From Trichoplax adhaerens (lineage: Eukaryota > Animalia > Placozoa): DNA of 64,000 bases. The translations under genes and the position numbers were made by a program. Each line of letters begins with the position of its first letter. The stretch's first letter is position 1. Under the pieces are notes generated by a model, which was not told where the DNA came from, did not search any database, and saw nothing but the letters and a program-made list of their open reading frames with translations. Of this stretch, positions 5,585 to 59,115 are shown piece by piece. The stretch spans positions 4,758,336-4,822,335 of the forward strand of contig NW_002060948.1 of NCBI RefSeq assembly GCF_000150275.1. The letters run 5' to 3'.

Positions 5585-6130
5585 AATACAGTGAATGTTG
5601 ACACGGTACAGTCCAATTCTTACAGTCTAATATACTGTACGGTACTGTACCGTGTCGGACAGTACTGTACAGTACAGTACAGTACAGTACTGTACAGTAT
5701 ATTGTACTTTGTACACTGTGTACTGTACATTGTAGAGACATCATTGATACTTTTACAGTAGCGAGATGCTTACTCTGCTGTACTGTACTCAGTTATCATT
5801 CACCAGTGTAGGCAGGGTGATACGCCACAACTGGAAGACCAGGGTCCGGACCGGACCAGACCAGACCATGAAGACCTCTGCATTTTATAATTAATTAATC
5901 TATCTACTGTACAGACTACAGTACAGTACTGTACAGTACTAAATCATTCTTCTACCGTACCTAGTATCGTACACAGTCTGTGCTTACTGTACTGTAGTCG
6001 ACGTAACAGTACTGTACAGACTGTACAGTACAGTACAACTCTCCGGTACTACTGTGACTGTAAATCAGTCAGCTTTAGTATCAACCCGTTCAGGTATACG
6101 AAACCCTATACTGTACTATACTGTAGAGTA
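5585..6130. promoter_or_regulatory. ACAGT/ACTGT-rich island in the NPHP4-WDR70 bidirectional promoter region
   Basis: Dense imperfect (ACAGT)n/(ACTGT)n runs, e.g. agtactgtacagtacagtacagtacagtactgtacagta, between two divergent start codons ~930 bp apart. The repeat is seen directly; the promoter role is inferred from position. Confidence 0.7.
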
Positions 6131-43800: not shown

Positions 43801-45079
43801 TTAGGCTTCCGCTAATGCCATGTTTAACCATGAAAATATCGTCAAATTAATTGGTGTGTCATTCACAAGTGATCCTTACTATTTGATTTTGGAATACATG
43901 CAGAATGGAAATTTACACGATTACTTAGCTAATAATGCTGCGCCTATACAAGCAGAACATCGTGTTGCAATAGGAAAGAGTAAGGAAAATCTAGCTAAGC
44001 TATAAGAATAATTAAGTAATAATGATTTATCAATAGCTTATTGACCATCACTTAATAGTAAATAATTTCGTTGCAAATTTTCACACTACATGCGTTATTT
44101 TGTCTAATAAGACTAGTATTTGACCGCATTCTAACAATTTTGATTAATATTATTTATAGTTAGTGAAGCAATAATAATTATGATATTGATTATGGCATTG
44201 TTTAGTCTTCGTTTAATTCACAACTATAGCCGATACCGGTAACTCTCTTTATCAATAGAGTAAGGTAGACGAATAGTAATGCTCTTAAGATCTAACACTA
44301 AATTCTTTATGTCGGATTTATTATGTCAAGGGCTACAAAATAATGATTATATCAATATGGAAGGCGTTGAATATCTTGAGCACAGTGATCTCATTAGGTT
44401 CCTAGTCCAAGCAGCATCGGCTTTAAACTACTTATCCAATCTGAGAGTCATACATCGCGATATTGCAGCCAGAAATTGTTTACTGGGTGAAAATAAGCAT
44501 CTTAAAATATCCGATTTTGGATTATGTAAAGATATATATGCTGATCAACATTACAAGGTAAAAATATAAAAAATTACGTAGTATTAGAGTTGCACAGCTA
44601 CACTTACATTGCATGTTGAAACATGCGTTATTCTAGTTTGCTACTTATTTGCCTAAAATTTCATCCAACCATAGATGCAGAAAATGAAAAATGTTCCCTT
44701 ACGATGGTCACCACCCGAAGTTTTACTAAGATCACTGTATACTGAAGAAAGTGATGTCTATTCCTTTGGTGTACTAATGTGGGAAGTTTTCTCATTTGCG
44801 ATATCACCATTTTATCAGTATACCTTTGATGAAGTAACTGCCATCATTAAAAGTGGTCAGACAAAAGAAGCCCTGAGTAGACCGGCTACTTGCATTAGTA
44901 ACGAAATTTGGAAACTTATGACTGAATGTTGGGAATTTTATCCTAAGGACAGGCCATCAGCATCTGAAATATTAACTAAATTGCTTTCAGAAGAAGATCA
45001 ATCGGTGTATGATAATTTGAATCCTGCGATGGAGTATATCGAGTGTTCACCTGTAAACCAAGAGTATACCCTGCAATAA
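40820..45079 (+). CDS. Receptor tyrosine kinase with an extracellular Frizzled-type cysteine-rich domain (ROR/MuSK/Nrk-like); 5' end not resolved
   Basis: CRD exons GYCSQYSGIAC (ROR GFCQPYRGIAC, MuSK GYCAQYRGEVC) and CLEISKEVICTIVFPPC...ICRQGC...LCPIEW; TM VWTIVIIVIAVVGSFITAGYAML; kinase LGEGHFSTVYKG, VALK, HENIVKLIGV, IHRDIAARNCL, KISDFGL, PLRWSPPE, SDVYSFGVLMWEVFS. Stop ends at 45079. The signal-peptide exon could not be placed. Confidence 0.92.
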
Positions 45080-46635: not shown

Positions 46636-49344
46636 TTATAGATGCACAGGTCCATGATTGATAGTGCTACTGCTTATTTTTCCCTTTATTTGCCTTTCTT
46701 CTTTGCTAAACCACATTCCATAGCCAAAATAGATTATAAAACCTATTTCGACATAATATGTAAAAAAAATTTATGCTATGGATTAATTCCTAGTAATGTG
46801 TCAGCACCAAGATAAATTGGTGGTCACGATATCTTGTAACTACTTTGGGTATGTTCCTTACGACATGTTAAATACTACGTAATGTATGTATGACTGTATA
46901 TCATAGATGAAAAAGTATCAGTTAACAATCGCAAATAACCCAGTCAACTAGATTATATGTACTTCCAGTCTTGTAAATTATTATCATAACGCGTTCACGA
47001 ATATATAATGAACCCTACTGTAATGACATGTCTAGTCTTATTTTGATCTATACGGTATACTAACAGGGCACACGATTTTTGTAGCATTTGAGACTATAAT
47101 ATTTATTTATAGTTTTAATTTCTTAATTACTTATCTCACGTCATAAATTGGACTTACCGATTGCCATCCATACACCAAATCTAATCCAGGTCTGATAAGG
47201 TAGTTTAAGCATTAGGAATAGGTTAATGAAAACACTGAATATAGGCAAAAATGGTAGAAATTTAACTTTAAAACTCAATTCTTTGGAATTTTGAGGCTGC
47301 TTATAAATGAGGACCGTGAGAGCAATGATACCAATACCAAAAATACAGAGCAAAAGTATTGACCACCAAGCTTTCTTGGCTAAATACTCCATTCCGAAAA
47401 CGATAATTGCGTTAAATGCCAGAATGAGAACACTGATTGCTGAAATAGACATTATAACCAATCGGCCACTGCGATTAGTAGGTTCAGGCAACTGCTTCTC
47501 AATCAGTTGGCATTCATCAGAAGGAACGTAAGTATCATCAGGATTTAAGCTATGGCTATTTTGTAGTACGGTATGAAGTTGACTTGCCCTTAATTCATTC
47601 TTGTCATTGCCTGTTTCATTTCCGCTATCAGTAAAATTAATTGGGCTAGGATCTACAAAAGAACTATCAATTGGTCGAACGCTAGGATCTTCACCACTGC
47701 GACCTTCTGTATAGCTATCAGGCTGGTATCGTAAGATAAGAACACAAACCGCCACTAGTGTGTAGGCTAATAAGGTGCCAATGGACATCATATTAACTAA
47801 TTCAGCTAAATCAAACAACATTGCCATTAGGCCAGCTAGCAGCCCAGATACGGCAGTAGCAATTAACGGAGTCTTAAAACGTGGATTAACGTTTGCAAGA
47901 AATCTGTAACATAATTCATAAATAAATCAGTGAATATACATAAATTATTAATTAATTATATTACGCGATAATTTAAAGTTACCAAGAGATCAAATCACCT
48001 TATCTAGTTGGGAAATCGTATTAATAACAATTTTCATCAACTTCTGTAATATATTGTTATCAGTAAAGAATCGAAATGTAATCTGAGGCGCTTTCGGCTG
48101 CTTTTAATAGCGAGATTCACTAGAAAATATTACTATACTATGACGACCTGGTTTTATTCACAATATTCTCGAATCGATATTGACGAAATCAGTTAGAATA
48201 CAATAAAAGATTACTTTTACTACTTTCTATAAAACTAAGCGTACCTAAATAATAGTCCATCGCTAGCCATTGCATACACAACACGTGGGAGAGGAAACAT
48301 AGCACCAAGTAGAGAAGTAGATAACCCACAAACAGCTCCAACCGATATAACATAGTGGGCGGAAGGTAAATGATTGTAAGCAAATACTTGTGGTAGTGGT
48401 ACCTTTGGGTCGATTAAGTAATATGGGCACATCAAAGTAATCACTGCAGAAACGCTACCATATGCAATAAAACAAATTATCAAGGACAGGACGATACTAC
48501 GAGGGATTACTTTTTGCGGATTTACCACTTCTTCGCCAGTCGTAGCGATAGCATCGAAGCCAACGAAGGCATAAAAACATGTCGCTGCACCACTGACTAA
48601 GCCTGCAAATCCAAAAGGGAAAAATCCTCCTTCACCGTCCTTAGCTGGGTCAGGTACCTCTGATGGTGGAATTTCCCAATTGTGAATATTGGCATAGAAG
48701 AAGCCAGCCCCTACTACAAAGGCAACTACCATCAGATTAACAGTCGTAAATATATTGTTGACTATGGAAGATTCTTTAACCCCAAATGCCAAGACTGCCG
48801 TTAATAATAAGGTGATTAAAAGAGAGAAGAAGTCAGGATACTTTGCTAGGCCGGGTATATCCATTGGCGTATGATTGAGAAAATAATGGGATATTTTATT
48901 GCCAAGTAACGAATCAAAGTTCTCACTCCATGCTCGAGCAACGGATGCCGTTCCAATCACATATTCAAGGATTAAATTCCAGCCGATAACAAAGGCTACT
49001 AATTCACCAACCGTAACGTAACTGAAGACGTATGCAGAGCCAGTTTTCGGAACCCGAGCACCAAATTCAGCGTAACATAGACCGGCTAAAATCGAAGCAA
49101 AAGCAGCAATAGCAAATGCAACAATTACGCCAGGTCCTGCCGTTTGCCTAGCGACTTGACCTGTCACTACATAGATTCCAGTACCCAAAGTGCTGCCGAC
49201 GCCTAAGGCGGTTAGATCGAATGCATTCAAGCAACGCTTAAGCTCTGTATTGGCGATCGTTTCTTTATCATATAACTTTAATCGAACAATCCGTTGAAGG
49301 AAACGTTGGCGATACTGGCTAAATCGACTAGACGATTCTTCCAT
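46636..49344 (-). CDS. Cationic amino acid transporter (SLC7A1-4/CAT family), 3 coding exons (~49344-48244, ~47904-47157, ~46743-46636)
   Basis: [122 protein letters not shown]; stop TAA ending at 46636. Confidence 0.96.
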
Positions 49345-49674
49345 TCTCCTACAAAAATGAAGTCAATTAAAATAAATAAATTATGTAGACAATTTAACTG
49401 TTGATTTAAAGCAGTACCGACGAAAGAGGCCGGTCAATCGTAGCACTAGATACTATAGGTACAGTACTTACTCTTATTATTCCGTAAACTTTCTCGATTG
49501 GAGAATTTATCAAATAATAAATTAATTTCTGGCCAGTAATTTGCTGTCTAACACTAGTTCAAAGCAATAGAAACTCAAAATTATAGCAACAAGAACAAGA
49601 GCACAGCCGCAATAAAGAAGTTTTACACGGACCCACTCAAAAAGATGTAGAGGGATGTTAGGCAACTTTCAACT

Positions 49675-49965
49675 TTAGACTGTACAGTACTGTATTCTAC
49701 CGTACTGTGCACTGTACTAACTTCCATACAGTGCACTACACTGTACTGTACTATGTACTGTACAGTGTACACTGAACAGTACTGTACTGTACAGTACAGT
49801 GCTCACATGATCGTCATGTTCTATCGATGTCCAGTATAGTACTGTACAATGTACAGTACATGCGTGTTGAGTTCTGCATCATTGCAGTCAGAACATGAAA
49901 TTTCCTCTTGAAAGTCTGCTACAGTATAGAAATTGGCCATTGACAGAGACATTACACTGTACTGA
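49675..49965. promoter_or_regulatory. ACAGT/ACTGT-rich island upstream of the SLC7A gene
   Basis: Dense tactgtac/acagtac runs just 5' of a probable untranslated first exon (splice donor near 49470). Confidence 0.7.
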
Positions 49966-50060: not shown

Positions 50061-50407
50061 TTTCTTATAGAAGCATGGTTGTGCTACTTTCTTTTACAAG
50101 CGGATTAAGGAGTGTATTCGCAGTGCTCAGTCTACTTCTGCAATCAGTCCAAAGAAATGAGTCGACAAATTTATAACATCATTTCACTTATATCCATGGA
50201 AGCATTTATACATGCTTCCATGGATATAAGTGAAATGGTGTTACAAATTTGTAGCACAGCAATGCTTCCTTTCTTACGGAAGCATTGCTGTGCTACTTTC
50301 TTTCACAAGCGAATTACGAAGTATGTTTGCAGTGCTCAGTCTGCTTCTACAATCAGTCCAAAGAAATGAGTCGACAGATTTGTAACACCATTTCACTTAT
50401 ATCCATG
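50061..50407. repeat. Composite repeat: two ~138-bp direct copies (period 209 bp) separated by an inverted, internally deleted copy, creating two hairpins
   Basis: Copy A 50061-50198, copy B 50270-50407. Hairpin 1 has 41-bp arms (50165-50205/50212-50252, 2 mismatches). Hairpin 2 has perfect 19-bp arms (50251-50269/50278-50296). Confidence 0.92.
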
Positions 50408-51307: not shown

Positions 51308-52672
51308 TTATTCTTCTTTAGTGCCTTGTTCGATCGACTTTGTTATCCGCGTTGTATTAATGTTATTGTAGCCAGCAATACCGAAGAATTGATCCATGTG
51401 TCGATTAATTTGTGCTGGTCCTAGCTTGCCTCCGTTGCTGTTCACAAAGACTAAATTTTTGGTATCTTTTTGGACTAATGGCACGACCAAGCGGATATAA
51501 TGAATATATTTTTCCAGCGCATACTTCGCATATCCAAGAACGGTAATCATCATGCCATCCATGCTTGTAATTTTGCGATCTGAAATTGTAATAATTATTT
51601 CGGCTCCATCATTATCCCACGATCCTTCACAATCTTGAACATCAGCAAATGTCATGTTGCAAAGAGCAGATAACTTAGGCCTGCAGGTAACCAGTAATTG
51701 AGCTAAAACAAAACGGAGACTATATGTATAACTCTTTCTATCAAAGGTTTGCCAAGATTTTTTCTCAATTAGTGCTTTTGCATAGGCAGTTAGCTCTTCA
51801 AATCTATCTCGATACTCGCTATGATTTACAACCTTAAACAATTCTGCTGGATCTATCAAAAACGAGCCACTATGGTAAGATGCGCGAACCTCTCTTTCGC
51901 GCGTTTTACGAAGAGCCCTAAAGCGATTAAATAATCCGCTCAGAAAGATATCTTCCTTGTAATCAATTCCGGATAAATGCCTACGATAACAGGCAAACTG
52001 TCTGGCTCGATCAACGCTCCCAATAAAATTACAAATACTCGACTCGCATAATTTAGCATCTTTGTAGAGCAAATCTGTATAAACTCTTAACTTTCGAGAA
52101 TCTACAATAGGTTGCCATGATAGTTCGTTCCCATCGCATGCCCAAAATAAGTATTTATTAATTGCGGTAGCAATATTCCTTGCAAATCCATGCGGTTTAC
52201 CGGAACTTCTTAGATAGCGATAAAAATCCTTAACTTCTTTGTGCTTATCTGGATATTTTTTTCCTAATCCAAATTCTTTCAATTTACAGTTGCTAGCATG
52301 ACGGCTAGGACGAAAAGCGCTGGCTTCAGGTCGGCCAGATTCGTCAAATCGATTCACATTTATTTCTTCCTCTATCAATTCATTGCTATCTTTTGGTTTT
52401 TTTTCACTGCGTTCCATCTCTTCCTGATTTAATTCATCTATATCCGACTCGTCAAAAACCTCAGTAATGTTTGATTCGACTTTATCGGTACAAGCTGCTT
52501 CCTCCAATGCTATAGTTGTATCTTCTTTACTAATAACCACATCTGTGACACCTGCTTCCTTCGATTGTCCAAGCTCACTGCTATTGCTTTGCTGTAATTG
52601 AATCAATGAATCACATAATGTTTCTTCCACGGTAATAGGATTTTTATCGGTAAAATTGTTTCCAACATTTTC
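51308..52672 (-). CDS. Terminal exon of a tyrosine-recombinase (phage-integrase fold)-derived protein, apparently catalytically inactive; upstream exons not resolved
   Basis: Open frame from splice acceptor ttttacag|GAA at 52672; acidic N-terminal region. Core-binding-like FYRYLRSSGKPHGFARNIATAINKYL and LRVYTDLLYKDAKLCESSICNFIGSV. Catalytic-domain-like LLVTCRPKLSALCNMT, IIITISDRKIT, LEKYIHYIR, LVFVNSNGGKL, INTTRITK. Stops before the box II H/Y motif. Confidence 0.72.
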   Translation of the reverse strand, partial: ENVGNNFTDKNPITVEETLCDSLIQLQQSNSSELGQSKEAGVTDVVISKEDTTIALEEAACTDKVESNITEVFDESDIDELNQEEMERSEKKPKDSNELIEEEINVNRFDESGRPEASAFRPSRHASNCKLKEFGLGKKYPDKHKEVKDFYRYLRSSGKPHGFARNIATAINKYLFWACDGNELSWQPIVDSRKLRVYTDLLYKDAKLCESSICNFIGSVDRARQFACYRRHLSGIDYKEDIFLSGLFNRFRALRKTREREVRASYHSGSFLIDPAELFKVVNHSEYRDRFEELTAYAKALIEKKSWQTFDRKSYTYSLRFVLAQLLVTCRPKLSALCNMTFADVQDCEGSWDNDGAEIIITISDRKITSMDGMMITVLGYAKYALEKYIHYIRLVVPLVQKDTKNLVFVNSNGGKLGPAQINRHMDQFFGIAGYNNINTTRITKSIEQGTKEE

Positions 52673-55600
52673 CTGTAAAACATTAATTTTACAGAAGAAT
52701 CACTGGAGAGGAAAAAAAAAAATTTTTTTTCTAAATATCAAAAACGCCTTGTATTTAGCTATAAATTTACATCAATTGAGCTAGAGCTATCGACTGGATT
52801 GTCCGGTATTATAATTATAGTATTAGATAAATTGGAGGTGCTTGCTTGCTGATTGGTTGCTGAAAATTAACGTACAGACAATCATGTTATAATATAAAAT
52901 AAATATGAATGAACTTAAACGTAATATCACTATGAGCTTCTATGAGCTCCTTCCATAGCAATTATAGAACAGGCATAGTACCTACATGATTTAGATTGCA
53001 GATGAGTATCAGTAAACTTTAGTTGATCTTGTAACTTTTTTTCTCTCTGAATTTCTGCAGAAAAATCGGTAAAACAGTTATATGGATTATTGCCCCTAGG
53101 CTATACAATGGATACTAAAAAATGGTGTAGAATACGTGCATCACGTATTTAATGAGCATAAAATTTTCAATTTATTCTTAAATAACTTAGAATTGATATT
53201 TTTAATTACTTGAAGTCACCCCAAAATATGTCCGGCTAGATGCCTTGCCATAATAGTAAGCCATGTCGATAAATATTTTATCAAAAAACGATGAAACCTT
53301 GCTCTTTCCGAAAAAAATTTGATTTTCAAACGACGCAATCGACGACCATTTGCTTGACCGATTCGGCGTAAAAACTGAAATTGTACTGATATTCACGAAA
53401 AGAGCTATATAAAATATGAAAATTTGAACGTATCATTCATGATAGTATAAAAACAGTATGTGGGAAAGTATTGTGGAGTTGTTTTTAACGGTAATTTCAG
53501 TGTTTGTTTTGGTTGTCGTTAGGCATAATGTTTATTTCTATCTAGTTCATAAAAACAATTTGAAAATCTCTTTTGCTCATAATTTAAATTCTATATTTAT
53601 AATATAGTGCCAAAGTTATTCTAAATGTTATGATCAAGCCGATGCATGGTGCACTATAATTTTAAGTCATTAAGTCATTGGTGCAAAGTTGTTGCATTCT
53701 ACTATAAATGATAAACAAGCAGTTCTCAAGACCTAATAAATCAACTCTATAAAAATCCACAGAGTGTTACTTTATCTTTCATGAAATAATGAGGAATATA
53801 TTATCAATTACAGATATTTCCTTGCCGATCTTCAATACTGTAATGGTACGCATATATATGTAAAGGTAGACAACAAACATATAATGTTATTTTTTTGTAT
53901 AAATAGTTCAGTTAACAGTACTTATATGTTTGATCACTCTGCACTATTATTAACTATCTTAATATCGATCACTTTTAAAGCCCTAGTAGAGTATATAACA
54001 TTACTTAATTTTGTGACCTTGATAGCATCATAACAATGACAGATACGCTCTTATGATAAATTTCTAAGGATGACGTACAGTGTCAGTTTTAACACAAAGC
54101 TGATTAGGTTTTTTGTTCGGTATCTGCTAAATAAAATGATGTGAAAATTCAGTACAAGATACAGCATTGCTATAATTTTAATATTCGGTTGGTAATTGTG
54201 TGAGGATGCTAGATTAATCATAATTCAACATTTTTATAGTTAGCCAAAACTCTTACGAGATTTTAATGGCTGAAAATCTGCCAATGATGTTCACGTATCG
54301 TACTCAAAAATGAAGGCATCTCTTTCTTGCAAGAAATAATCGTCTAACGCATAATTATTTCTTCAGGTTCCGTTGATCTTTTTATCAATTAGCTATTATG
54401 ATCTAAGAGATGTAACGTTACGTGCCAAAAGTATTTAGAGTCTTACATCGTCAAGACTTCAGATAAACACTTTTAAAAATACTAGTGTCAGCTTTTTTAA
54501 AATAAGTCTAATCAAATTTAAGATATGAGCATAGTTATCATATAAAATTATTTAAAATCAAATTAAACTTAAGAACGTTTTTGGATGTTTTACTCACAGT
54601 TATAATCTACTACATATATGAACATTGACAGACCTCATAGAACATTAAGATCATAATGATGATCATTGTTCCGCTAAAGAACCTGAACTAAAATATTATT
54701 TCAGTTACTGCTGATGTTACCAGCTTCATATTAGCGTATTAACTTAAATTGCCAATTGTGCTTTATATTTGTATTCAGTCGAGATCTTATAAACAGTAAG
54801 AAAGTAAAGTTCTCATACAAGATTGATTATACATTATTATGGTATGGCAGTAGTTAATTTCCACCTAATCAAGGCAATAAATTTATAGTTTTAAATTTAC
54901 ATGACTACTATATGATATTTATTTCTGGGTATTTCTCCTATCAATAGCCAAAGATTTAAGTTTTAAATTATCCTATTGAGCCAATACTCATACAGCACAT
55001 TTCATGTACTAAATTCATTTTTTTGATTGCCGGTATTTCTATAGCCCCAATTTTACTTCGTTTTGTATAAATTCCACACAATCATATAATATCTTAGTGG
55101 CGCAATATTGCTAATATTTGCATAAAAATTTTTCTTCGATTAGAATCCAGTTACGGAAAATTTCTCGGATATAGTTTCTTGACATCAACTTTCTCGTTTA
55201 TATTTAACATTTATATACTTGCAGGAAAGAACCCTAATTATATATGTGTTTTAATAAATAGAGCAGAATTCAAAATATGATATGATCCGACCTGGTAGGT
55301 GTTGCCCTATTGTATTAAATTTGATAACTGTGATTTTTTAGTCGTATTAGCATCTTACGCGAACAAATTATTTTACACCGACTGCTAGTGCGCGAATGAA
55401 GGCACTGTACGGTACATATCTATATCTCTCAGACGCTATTTTGCTCGCGGAAATAGATTAATCTGAATTATGAGCCTGAAATAGCTTTTTATTGGTTGTT
55501 TCCCTTAAAAGTAGCATATAAAAATATAGATATTATCTGAGGATTCCTATATTAATCTGAGAATCCCTAAATGAGCCCACAACAAACTTTGTATCTATTA

Positions 55601-58059: not shown

Positions 58060-59115
58060 AGTACACTGTACAGTAACTAACATACAGTAAGAGAATATAT
58101 CTAGAATTTTAAATGTAACATTCACAGTAAATTACAGTACTATGTAACTCTACATTGGTCATTTCTAGTCATAATATAGTACAGTATAAATTAAGAGAAA
58201 ATTTGTGGCAACCTTTCTTGAAAGCCACTCGACTTTTGCGAAATTTTCGGCGAGTAACAAAGTACAGTGAATACTGATGGAGTCAGGCCCTCATACAGAC
58301 TATAAAGGTTTTGAACCGAACAGAACCTTTCTCAGGTCACCGTCAGGGGCTTGTAAGACAAACAAATACGAATATTCTACAGTAACACAGTACAGTATTT
58401 CTATTGCTATTAGTACTGTAGGCAGTACTGTAAACCAGTGTCCAAAGTACTGTACTGTATTGTACAATGTACAGTACTGTACGGTAGTGTCAAAGATGTA
58501 CAGTAGTATAAAATACAGTACAGTACAGTACTGAATGATGTGCACAGTACTACTGCATACTGTACTGTGCTACTGTATGATTGGTTTGGGCCACCGTACT
58601 GTATTTCGTCGACCATGCGCACTGCACAGTGCAAGGCTACAGTGTACAGTACTCTTGGTTGTACTGTATACTGTACTCAGTGTACTGTACACTGTACAAG
58701 ATGCGGTGCAGTCTACTGATTATTTATTTATTATATTCAGTCAGAGATTTTCCTCAAATGAATCGAAGATAGAAAGGAAAGTAGTTCTCCATTCCCATCA
58801 GATCGTTCATCGTGACGCAGAAACAAAATCATGACTATCAGAGCACGGAAAGGGAAAAAAGTAATTATGGTATGTTGATAGCACTGATTGGCGAGTACTA
58901 CGAGAAACTATTCTATACAGCCTGTGATGACTCGTAATGTGTAGTAGAATCTTGGAATGAAATTGCTCTACAGTAAAATATAAGCCAACAAACTCGACGT
59001 AATTGAGTGCAAACGTCACTGTACTGTACAGGTGTACCGTAGGGTGATACCTTCTAGTGGACTGTACGGTACTGTATACCACAGTACTGTCTAGTACTGT
59101 AGTTCAATTTTACTG
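58060..59115. promoter_or_regulatory. Large ACAGT/ACTGT-rich island surrounding the SEC62 first exon
   Basis: Dense runs at 58375-58715 and again at 59015-59102, flanking the 30-nt first coding exon at 58831. Confidence 0.72.

What the first reader, a model, noticed from the sequence alone, without database searches (positions are those of the whole stretch)
51308..52672. Spliced, intact gene built from a catalytically dead tyrosine recombinase: candidate domesticated DNA-binding protein
Seen: a stop-free ~454-codon terminal exon entered via a canonical acceptor, between two housekeeping genes, with no RT, capsid or polymerase ORF nearby. Knowledge: tyrosine recombinases have a helical core-binding domain and a catalytic domain with R...K...HxxR...H/W...Y. 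Inference by eye: the core-binding pattern and fold motifs (NMT, beta-hairpin K in SDRKIT, Y...IR, LVFVNSNG) are kept. The box I Arg appears shifted or replaced (TCRPKLS), HxxR reads TRIT, and the protein ends before the His and Tyr nucleophile. Loss of catalysis with a preserved frame and an added acidic N-terminus is the pattern of a domesticated recombinase, conceptually like the Crypton-derived DUF3504 genes (ZMYM2-4, QRICH1, KIAA1958). The motifs do not obviously belong to that family, so this may be an independent event.
Basis: partly seen in the sequence, partly recalled or inferred. Interest (0 to 1): 0.88.

Follow-up and report, generated by a model that had tools for sequence, protein, structure and literature searches.

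The report
Dead tyrosine-recombinase gene in Trichoplax
A Trichoplax gene encodes a protein that keeps the whole DNA-clamping fold of a tyrosine recombinase but has lost the residues needed to cut DNA, and evolution preserves it very tightly, so it is a mobile-element enzyme turned into a host protein whose job is still unknown.

Summary
Window 51308-52672 (minus strand) is a 454-codon stop-free terminal exon, the longest ORF in the window. It belongs to Trichoplax adhaerens gene TRIADDRAFT_57648, which lies between Sec62 and an amino-acid permease.

- **Fold:** an AlphaFold model (pLDDT above 90 for residues 121-450) matches only tyrosine recombinases (Cre, XerA, XerH, Tn1549 and lambda integrases) across both domains.
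- **Catalytic residues:** aligned with relatives that keep R-K-R-H-Y, the protein has Lys at the first Arg and keeps the hairpin Lys. It has Thr at the second Arg and ends 10 residues later, before the His and Tyr. No remnant lies downstream.
- **Selection:** against an ortholog from a second placozoan-like assembly, the fold region is 332/347 identical at near-saturated synonymous sites (dN/dS about 0.01). The acidic N-terminus drifts (dN/dS about 0.9).
- **Gene model:** exon lengths, splice sites and the stop position are conserved.
- **Family:** no member matches Pfam DUF3504. The gene sits in a small placozoan clade whose basal member, TRIADDRAFT_57598, keeps all catalytic residues.

The domestication reading is supported. 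DNA binding is inferred, not shown.

The parts
53210..53264 (-). Exon 1 (55 nt): start codon and MAYYYGKASSRTYFGVTS, followed by a GT donor
   Evidence: Matches the annotated model P0001. The ortholog contig L001 has a 55-nt exon with the same ATG and donor, and the differences are mostly synonymous.
52986..53054 (-). Exon 2 (69 nt), a Lys/Gln-rich segment
   Evidence: The length (69 nt) and the AG/GT boundaries are conserved in L001.
52771..52859 (-). Exon 3 (89 nt), which encodes the hydrophobic-then-acidic/Ser motif IIIIPDNPVDSSSSID
   Evidence: The L001 exon is 98 nt, a difference of 9 nt that keeps the frame. The motif is conserved there as VITIPDDP.
51308..52672 (-). Exon 4, the terminal exon: 454 codons plus the TAA stop.
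   Evidence: The stop is at the same position in the ortholog, and the DNA alignment degrades just after it.
52343..52672 (-). Acidic, predicted-disordered N-terminal part of exon 4 (residues 1-110)
   Evidence: pLDDT is below 50. For residues 1-120, pI is 4.05 with 32 D+E against 10 K+R. For the 106 alignable codons of residues 1-110, 27/106 are identical to the ortholog and dN/dS is about 0.9.
51863..52342 (-). Family-specific N-terminal motif (FRPSR...GLGKKYP) and the helical core-binding domain with its long linker helix (residues about 111-270)
   Evidence: Helices 124-267 have pLDDT above 90. The region aligns with the N-terminal domain of Cre, Xer and Int structures. A relative, P0007, gives a weak hit to Phage_int_SAM_4.
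51311..51850 (-). Catalytic-domain fold (residues about 275-454), cut off after the helix that normally carries HxxR
   Evidence: The model has helices 275-346, a hairpin at 359-378 and helices 380-451. It matches recombinase structures in Foldseek. The intact paralog's model continues with more C-terminal helices.
51674..51676 (-). Codon K333 (K404 of the 525-aa protein), which stands at the box I catalytic Arg
   Evidence: This column is Arg in all intact relatives.
51572..51574 (-). Codon K367, the retained beta-hairpin Lys
51341..51343 (-). Codon T444, which stands at the second catalytic Arg (the R of HxxR); the ortholog has Ala here
   Evidence: The profile alignments to XerH and XerA place this column on their LRH Arg.
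51308..51310 (-). TAA stop, 10 codons after T444, so the His-III and Tyr nucleophile segment is absent
   Evidence: tblastn with the tails of intact relatives finds nothing between 49.3 and 51.3 kb.

Best explanation
TRIADDRAFT_57648 is a placozoan host gene that descends from the tyrosine recombinase of a mobile element, most likely a Crypton-like element that encodes only a recombinase.

Shown:
- The protein keeps the complete two-domain C-shaped clamp of a tyrosine recombinase (core-binding domain plus catalytic-domain fold).
- It cannot catalyse strand cleavage. The first Arg is Lys, the second Arg is Thr, and the segment with the His and the Tyr nucleophile is missing.
- The fold region is under very strong purifying selection, and the gene is spliced, single-copy in the window and syntenic in Trichoplax sp. 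H2.

Inferred:
- The basic clamp (pI 9.4) still binds DNA, probably a specific site as recombinases do, without cutting it.
- The acidic, disordered, fast-evolving N-terminal tail, with its SUMO-interaction-like motif, recruits other factors.
- The protein would then act as a sequence-specific chromatin or transcription factor.

Catalytic residues were lost stepwise in a placozoan subclade after it split from a paralog that is still intact.
For: - **Identity:**
- **Fold:** AlphaFold pLDDT is above 90 over residues 121-450. All top Foldseek hits in PDB and BFVD are tyrosine recombinases or integrases, with probability 1.00 and 300-340 aligned columns spanning both domains.
- **Homology:** HMMER against 1.84 billion representatives finds 14 relatives. 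In an alignment of nine of the more distant relatives plus two cluster mates (A3), R, H-K, R, H and Y are invariant. Their profile aligns TxxRK, LxH and YY onto HxLRH, LGH and the Tyr of XerH and XerA. Three relatives hit PF00589 weakly.
- **Catalytic table:** K333, K367, T441, T444, and no His or Tyr.
- **Truncation:** no His/Tyr remnant lies downstream, and the stop position is conserved in the ortholog.
- **Selection:** in the fold region, 332/347 residues are identical with 147.5 synonymous against 16.5 nonsynonymous differences, giving dN/dS about 0.012. All three differences from the H2 ortholog lie outside the fold.
- **Gene model:** exon lengths of 55, 69 and 89 (98 in the ortholog) nt and the GT-AG sites are conserved. 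The independent H2 annotation gives the same 525-aa model in the same Sec62-gene-permease order.
- **Phylogeny:** the tree has a placozoan clade (92/92). Intact TRIADDRAFT_57598 is sister to a dead subclade (100/98).
- **Charge:** the fold region has 54 K+R against 38 D+E.
- **Lys at the first Arg tolerates DNA binding:** Tn1549 integrase R225K was crystallised bound to DNA (entries 6emz and 6en2, listed).
- **Mobile relatives:** a distant intact relative sits in a repeat-bounded unit found on at least 24 metagenome contigs.
Against: - I have no expression data and no DNA-binding data.
- Only one sufficiently diverged ortholog was available, and its species is unknown to me. Synonymous sites are near saturation, so the exact dN/dS is rough.
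- In the best-studied analogue, the ZMYM3 DUF3504 domain, the recombinase-derived domain mediates protein-protein contacts (RAP80-ABRA1), not chromatin binding (PMC5358723).
- Sequence-only matches to solved recombinases are marginal (E 0.03-0.17). The assignment rests on fold plus family alignment.
- Whole-genome copy number, including unannotated copies, could not be checked.
- A Crypton origin is an inference. The relatives come from unnamed metagenomic organisms.
Confidence: 0.55

Rival explanations
1. The protein is a non-catalytic partner or regulator of the intact paralog TRIADDRAFT_57598. Tyrosine recombinases work as tetramers, so the dead protein could join hetero-oligomers on DNA as an architectural or inhibitory subunit of a host recombination system.
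For: - An intact paralog with R-K-R-H-Y lies 425 kb away on the same scaffold and has the same gene architecture.
- Its model also matches only recombinases.
- The two proteins form one placozoan clade.
Against: - No ortholog of the intact paralog was found outside Trichoplax H1/H2, whereas three dead paralogs were found in the other assemblies.
- The dead protein lacks the C-terminal helices. From my knowledge of Cre, these make the cyclic subunit contacts.
- I have no interaction data.
Confidence: 0.15
2. The protein is a protein-protein interaction scaffold. The recombinase fold would have been re-used as a binding module with no DNA contact, as reported for the DUF3504 domain of ZMYM3.
For: - The ZMYM3 DUF3504 domain binds RAP80-ABRA1 and is dispensable for chromatin association (PMC5358723).
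- Kojima and Jurka name protein-protein interaction as one of two plausible roles (PMC3212892).
Against: - Here both DNA-clamping domains are kept and are strongly basic (pI 9.4).
- The hairpin Lys is kept, and the first Arg is conservatively replaced by Lys.
- There is no separate DNA-binding domain that would make DNA contact by the fold redundant.
Confidence: 0.2
3. The exon is a decaying transposon remnant or a mis-annotated pseudogene with no function.
For: - Catalytic residues are lost and the C-terminus is truncated.
- There is no Pfam hit.
Against: - dN/dS is about 0.012 over 347 codons at near-saturated synonymous divergence.
- Introns, splice sites and the stop position are conserved.
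- The gene is syntenic in H2.
- It is the only copy in the window and has no terminal repeats.
Confidence: 0.02
4. The protein is still an active recombinase, and the missing His/Tyr segment is supplied by an unannotated 3' exon or in trans.
For: Flp-type recombinases donate the Tyr in trans (my knowledge).
Against: - Both active-site Arg residues are also replaced, and the second position varies between orthologs (Thr against Ala).
- tblastn with six tails of intact relatives finds nothing in the 2 kb downstream.
- Conservation stops at the shared stop codon.
Confidence: 0.03

Closest known systems
DUF3504 genes (WOC/ZMYM2-4, QRICH1, KCTD1 isoform, KIAA1958): Crypton-derived domesticated tyrosine recombinases (Kojima and Jurka 2011, PMC3212892)
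   Same: - A host gene derived from a mobile-element tyrosine recombinase.
- The second Arg and the Tyr are lost.
- The domain lies within a single exon.
- The sequence is strongly conserved.
   Different: - None of the 14 family members matches Pfam PF12012.
- The N-terminal core-binding domain is kept as well as the catalytic-domain fold.
- The Tyr is lost by C-terminal truncation.
- There is no zinc-finger, BTB or other partner domain, only an acidic disordered tail.
- The family is known only from placozoans, so this is an independent event.
TRIADDRAFT_57598 (and TrispH2_007418), the paralog 425 kb away on the same scaffold
   Same: - About 30% identity over the whole fold.
- The same family-specific N-terminal motif.
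- An acidic N-terminus.
- Small 5' exons followed by one large terminal exon.
   Different: - It keeps R334, K368, R445, H470 and Y479 and has extra C-terminal helices.
- It is the basal, apparently intact member of the placozoan clade.
Crypton-like elements that encode only a recombinase (distant relatives P0006-P0015 from metagenomes)
   Same: - The same two-domain protein of about 380-440 aa.
- The same N-terminal GL..YP motif, and RPSALY.LT, HKT, F.N..G and T..RK blocks.
   Different: - They keep the full catalytic set.
- One (P0008) sits in a core of about 3.1 kb bounded by tandem arrays that carry a palindrome, and recurs on at least 24 contigs.
- The window gene is single-copy, spliced and without terminal repeats.
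Prokaryotic and phage tyrosine recombinases (Cre, XerA, XerH, XerD, Tn1549 Int, lambda Int)
   Same: The overall fold of both domains (Foldseek probability 1.00).
   Different: - 10-14% identity and no significant sequence hit.
- The helices that carry His/Trp-III and Tyr, and the C-terminal swap helix, are missing.
- The active-site Arg residues are replaced.

Membership tests
Tyrosine recombinase superfamily (DNA breaking-rejoining fold) | Two-domain fold: a helical core-binding domain plus a catalytic domain with a beta-hairpin | tested here: met
   The model has pLDDT above 90 over residues 121-450. All top PDB and BFVD matches are recombinases or integrases, over 300-340 columns.
Tyrosine recombinase superfamily (DNA breaking-rejoining fold) | Sequence homology to proteins with the complete catalytic set | tested here: met
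   phmmer E-values run from 3e-48 (P0005) down to 1e-3. R, K, R, H and Y are invariant in alignment A3.
Tyrosine recombinase superfamily (DNA breaking-rejoining fold) | Catalytic residues R-K-H-R-H/W-Y present | tested here: not met
   The positions read K333, K367, T441 and T444, and the His-III and Tyr segment is absent. The protein has the fold but is not an enzyme.
Tyrosine recombinase superfamily (DNA breaking-rejoining fold) | Pfam PF00589 match above the gathering score | tested here: not met
   The window protein has 0 Pfam hits at E up to 10. The best relative, P0006, scores 24.6 bits against a cut-off of 27.1.
DUF3504 / Crypton-derived domesticated genes | Match to Pfam PF12012 (DUF3504) | tested here: not met
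   No hit in any of the 14 family members at E up to 10. I could not run a profile-profile comparison because no non-human DUF3504 sequence was available by reference.
DUF3504 / Crypton-derived domesticated genes | Catalytic residues lost while the sequence stays under purifying selection as a host gene | tested here: met
DUF3504 / Crypton-derived domesticated genes | Expression as mRNA | not testable with these tools
   No transcript data were reachable. The only support is indirect: conserved splice sites and an identical model in the H2 annotation.
Crypton DNA transposon | Encodes a catalytically intact tyrosine recombinase | tested here: not met
Crypton DNA transposon | Multiple genomic copies or non-autonomous derivatives | tested here: inconclusive
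   There is one copy in the window, and only two T. adhaerens proteins belong to the family. The whole genome could not be searched at the DNA level.
DIRS/Ngaro recombinase-encoding retrotransposons | Adjacent reverse transcriptase / RNase H ORFs and terminal repeats | tested here: not met
   No ORF of 100 aa or more other than the gene lies between 49.3 and 58.8 kb. The ORFs tested there have no RT domain, and no terminal repeats bound the gene.

The most novel reading that the evidence does not exclude
Placozoans carry a host-encoded site-specific recombination module. The catalytically intact, spliced paralog TRIADDRAFT_57598 would perform programmed DNA rearrangement or resolution. The dead paralogs, this gene included, would act as site-selecting or regulatory subunits. 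This would be an animal system analogous to XerC/D with accessory factors, and one that arose independently of RAG.
Probability: 0.08. Interest if true: 0.88.

Novelty: new variant of a known kind. Interest (0 to 1): 0.62.

Why it matters
Domestication of tyrosine recombinases in animals is so far known from the DUF3504 genes, whose biochemical role is still unclear. This gene is an independent case, and it is cleaner in three ways:
- The whole two-domain DNA clamp is preserved without any other fused domain.
- Catalytic residues decay stepwise along a small gene tree.
- A still-intact sister gene sits in the same genome.

That makes the question "what does a dead recombinase do for its host?" directly testable in an early-branching animal with a small genome. 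It also adds a lineage-specific candidate DNA-binding protein class to placozoans, which have few such innovations described. I found no paper that mentions the gene or links placozoans to tyrosine recombinases.

Tried and rejected
- **Direct sequence searches with the window protein:** Pfam, PDB and PHROGs all returned 0 hits. The family is too diverged for single-sequence recognition.
- **Word-based homolog searches:** the search with the 14-sequence alignment returned only 3 proteins, apparently swamped by low-complexity words. The search with P0005 found no orthologs.
- **Viral contigs:** Viral contigs were therefore not scanned.
- **Lost His/Tyr exon:** I searched the 2 kb downstream, and downstream of the paralog contigs. 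Only chance-level hits appeared.
- **Terminal repeats:** I looked for terminal inverted or direct repeats around the gene and around the intact paralog and found none beyond chance. Animal Cryptons reportedly lack terminal repeats anyway (PMC3212892), so this does not discriminate.
- **Pseudogene or decaying transposon:** rejected on dN/dS.
- **DIRS/Ngaro origin:** rejected for this locus because no RT is nearby.
- **Exon joining:** Where a full-length sequence was needed I used the database entry P0001. Exons 1-3 were only translated one by one, and they are too short (18-29 aa) to search.

Full report
**What is there**

The finding lies on the minus strand. Window 52672-51311 reads as 454 sense codons followed by TAA. 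It is the longest ORF in the whole 64-kb window. It is entered through a pyrimidine tract and the acceptor ttttacag|G.

The window is Trichoplax adhaerens scaffold DS985246.1, not human. The exon is the last of four in TRIADDRAFT_57648 (525 aa, 100% identity). The exons are 53264-53210, 53054-52986, 52859-52771 and 52672-51308.

Downstream on the same strand lies an amino-acid permease gene (47141-49344; PF13520, PF00324, PF13906). Upstream, divergently oriented and 5.5 kb away, lies Sec62. No other ORF of 100 aa or more and no RT-like domain lies between them.

Full-length comparisons used the database entry P0001, and exons 1-3 were only translated separately.

**Is it a real gene?**

A genomic contig from another sequencing project (L001, Logan assembly of SRR30664516) carries the ortholog. 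I do not know its species, but it is evidently another placozoan.

- Exon 1 (55 nt) and exon 2 (69 nt) have identical lengths. Exon 3 differs by 9 nt. All GT-AG sites and the reading phase into exon 4 are kept.
- The stop codon is at the same position, and the DNA alignment degrades just after it.
- In the region from RFDESG to the end (347 codons), 332 residues are identical. There are 147.5 synonymous and 16.5 nonsynonymous differences (pS 0.67, dN/dS about 0.012).
- The preceding 106 codons are 27/106 identical, with dN/dS about 0.9.
- Trichoplax sp. H2 has a syntenic ortholog (Sec62, gene, permease, kinase). An independent annotation gives it the same 525-aa model. It has 3 substitutions, all outside the fold.

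The exon is therefore a constrained coding gene, not a relic. I could not test transcription.

**What is it built from?**

Single-sequence searches are blank: Pfam, PDB and PHROGs gave nothing. HMMER against 1.84 billion representative proteins finds 14 relatives.

- **Placozoan relatives.** Three are from the same sequencing project as the ortholog (P0002, P0003, P0004). One is a second T. adhaerens gene, TRIADDRAFT_57598 (P0005), 425 kb away on the same scaffold.
- **Distant relatives.** The rest are proteins of 378-519 aa from metagenomes and unnamed assemblies.
- **Conserved catalytic set.** In an alignment of nine of these more distant relatives plus two cluster mates (A3), R, H-K, R, H and Y are invariant. 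Three relatives hit PF00589 below threshold and one hits the N-terminal SAM-like integrase domain.
- **Match to solved recombinases.** The family profile aligns its F.N..G, T..RK, L.H and YY blocks onto LLFCNQKG, HMLRH, LGH and the Tyr of XerH and XerA. These matches are only marginal (E 0.03-0.17).
- **Structure.** An AlphaFold model of the window protein is confident (pLDDT above 90) from residue 121 to 450. Residues 1-120 are predicted disordered. Foldseek against PDB returns only tyrosine recombinases: XerA, Cre, XerH, Tn1549 Int, lambda Int and XerD. Probability is 1.00, and 300-340 columns cover both domains. The viral library likewise returns only integrases. The paralog's model behaves the same way and has additional C-terminal helices.

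**Catalytic positions**

| Position | Intact relatives | Window protein | Notes |
|---|---|---|---|
| Box I Arg | R | K333, in CRP-K-LSAL | Also K in P0002 and P0003; still R in P0004 |
| Hairpin Lys | K | K367, kept | D in P0004 |
| HxxR | T..R | T441 and T444 ('TRIT') | The second position is A in the ortholog, I in P0004 and D in P0003 |
| His-III | H | absent | The protein ends 10 residues after T444 |
| Tyr nucleophile | Y | absent | P0004 seems to have lost His-III by internal deletion but keeps a tail |

tblastn with the C-terminal tails of intact relatives finds nothing in the 2 kb downstream.

A maximum-likelihood tree puts all placozoan sequences in one clade (92/92). Intact TRIADDRAFT_57598 is sister to a dead subclade (100/98): P0004, then P0003, then the window gene with its ortholog. 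The residues therefore decayed stepwise, and partly independently, after catalysis became dispensable. The duplications predate the split of the two placozoans.

**Origin**

- The distant intact relative P0008 is encoded by an identical gene on at least 24 marine-metagenome contigs of about 4 kb. Its core of about 3.1 kb is bounded on both sides by 143/191-nt tandem arrays. Each array carries the palindrome GGTGCACATGTGCACC. This looks like a mobile element that encodes only a recombinase.
- Neither the window gene nor the intact paralog has terminal repeats. Animal Cryptons are reported to lack them as well (PMC3212892).
- No family member matches DUF3504.
- Kojima and Jurka list animal Cryptons in six phyla, and Placozoa is not among them. 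I found no paper on this gene or on placozoan tyrosine recombinases.

I conclude that this is a domestication independent of the DUF3504 genes. A Crypton-like ancestor is the likeliest source, but that is not proven.

**How it probably works**

Shown: an intact, basic recombinase clamp (pI 9.4; 54 K+R against 38 D+E) that cannot cleave DNA. It is joined to an acidic (pI 4.05), disordered, fast-evolving tail.

Inferred: the clamp still binds DNA without cutting.
- Lys at the first Arg is compatible with DNA binding. Tn1549 integrase R225K was crystallised on DNA (entries listed).
- The tail would recruit partners. From memory, and untested, exon 3 encodes IIIIPD...SSSS (VITIPDD in the ortholog), which resembles a SUMO-interaction motif.

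Rivals:
- It is a non-catalytic subunit working with the intact paralog.
- It is a pure protein-interaction module, as reported for the ZMYM3 DUF3504 domain, which binds RAP80-ABRA1 and is not needed for chromatin association (PMC5358723).
- The pseudogene reading and the hidden-exon reading are contradicted by the data.

**Verdict**

The DNA-binding role and the transcript structure remain to be shown experimentally. This is a new, independent variant of a known kind, the domesticated tyrosine recombinase. It is of solid but not extraordinary interest. The intact sister gene is the feature that could make it more interesting.

Noticed in passing
L013:10001-12448 (T. adhaerens DS985246.1 4384475-4386922), outside the window: The paralog TRIADDRAFT_57598 keeps all catalytic residues (R334, K368, R445, H470, Y479). 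It is spliced, with a 457-codon terminal exon, and has no terminal repeats. That terminal exon is identical in Trichoplax sp. H2. No ortholog was found elsewhere. It could be a live host recombinase or a young Crypton-like copy.
   Followed up: partly
L007:1-4503 and L008-L012 (marine metagenome contigs): The distant intact relative P0008 is encoded identically on at least 24 contigs. Its core of about 3.1 kb also holds a 104-aa ORF on the opposite strand. The core is flanked on both sides by 143/191-nt tandem arrays, each carrying the palindrome GGTGCACATGTGCACC. These are candidate recombination sites of an undescribed recombinase-encoding element.
   Followed up: partly
window 50061-50407: A 138-nt direct repeat (88% identity) is interleaved with 34-44-nt near-perfect inverted repeats. 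It lies in the spacer between the permease gene and the recombinase-derived gene. It looks like a MITE or hairpin element.
   Followed up: no
window 5662-6036, 49665-49870, 58439-58531: Arrays of GTACTGTAC-type palindromic penta/decamer repeats give 10 matches where 0 are expected by chance. Two of the arrays bracket the Sec62 to permease interval that holds the gene. They are probably a common intergenic satellite.
   Followed up: partly
window 52771-52859 (exon 3): The exon encodes IIIIPDNPVDSSSSID, and the ortholog has VITIPDDPACCSSRVD. A hydrophobic core followed by an acidic/Ser run resembles a SUMO-interaction motif. This is from memory and untested.
   Followed up: no
L004:400-1461, L002:505-1755 (assemblies of SRR30664515 and SRR30664517): The second placozoan-like organism has two further dead paralogs. 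The P0003 ORF extends 48 aa upstream of the called start and has a basic, NLS-like N-terminus. P0004 keeps the first Arg but has lost the hairpin Lys and seems to have deleted the His-III segment. I could not determine whether T. adhaerens has orthologs of these.
   Followed up: partly
window 44675-45079 (+): An exon encodes the C-terminal part of a tyrosine/serine-threonine kinase domain (PF07714). The H2 annotation of the syntenic gene adds a faint Frizzled-domain hit, so it may be a receptor kinase next to the permease.
   Followed up: no
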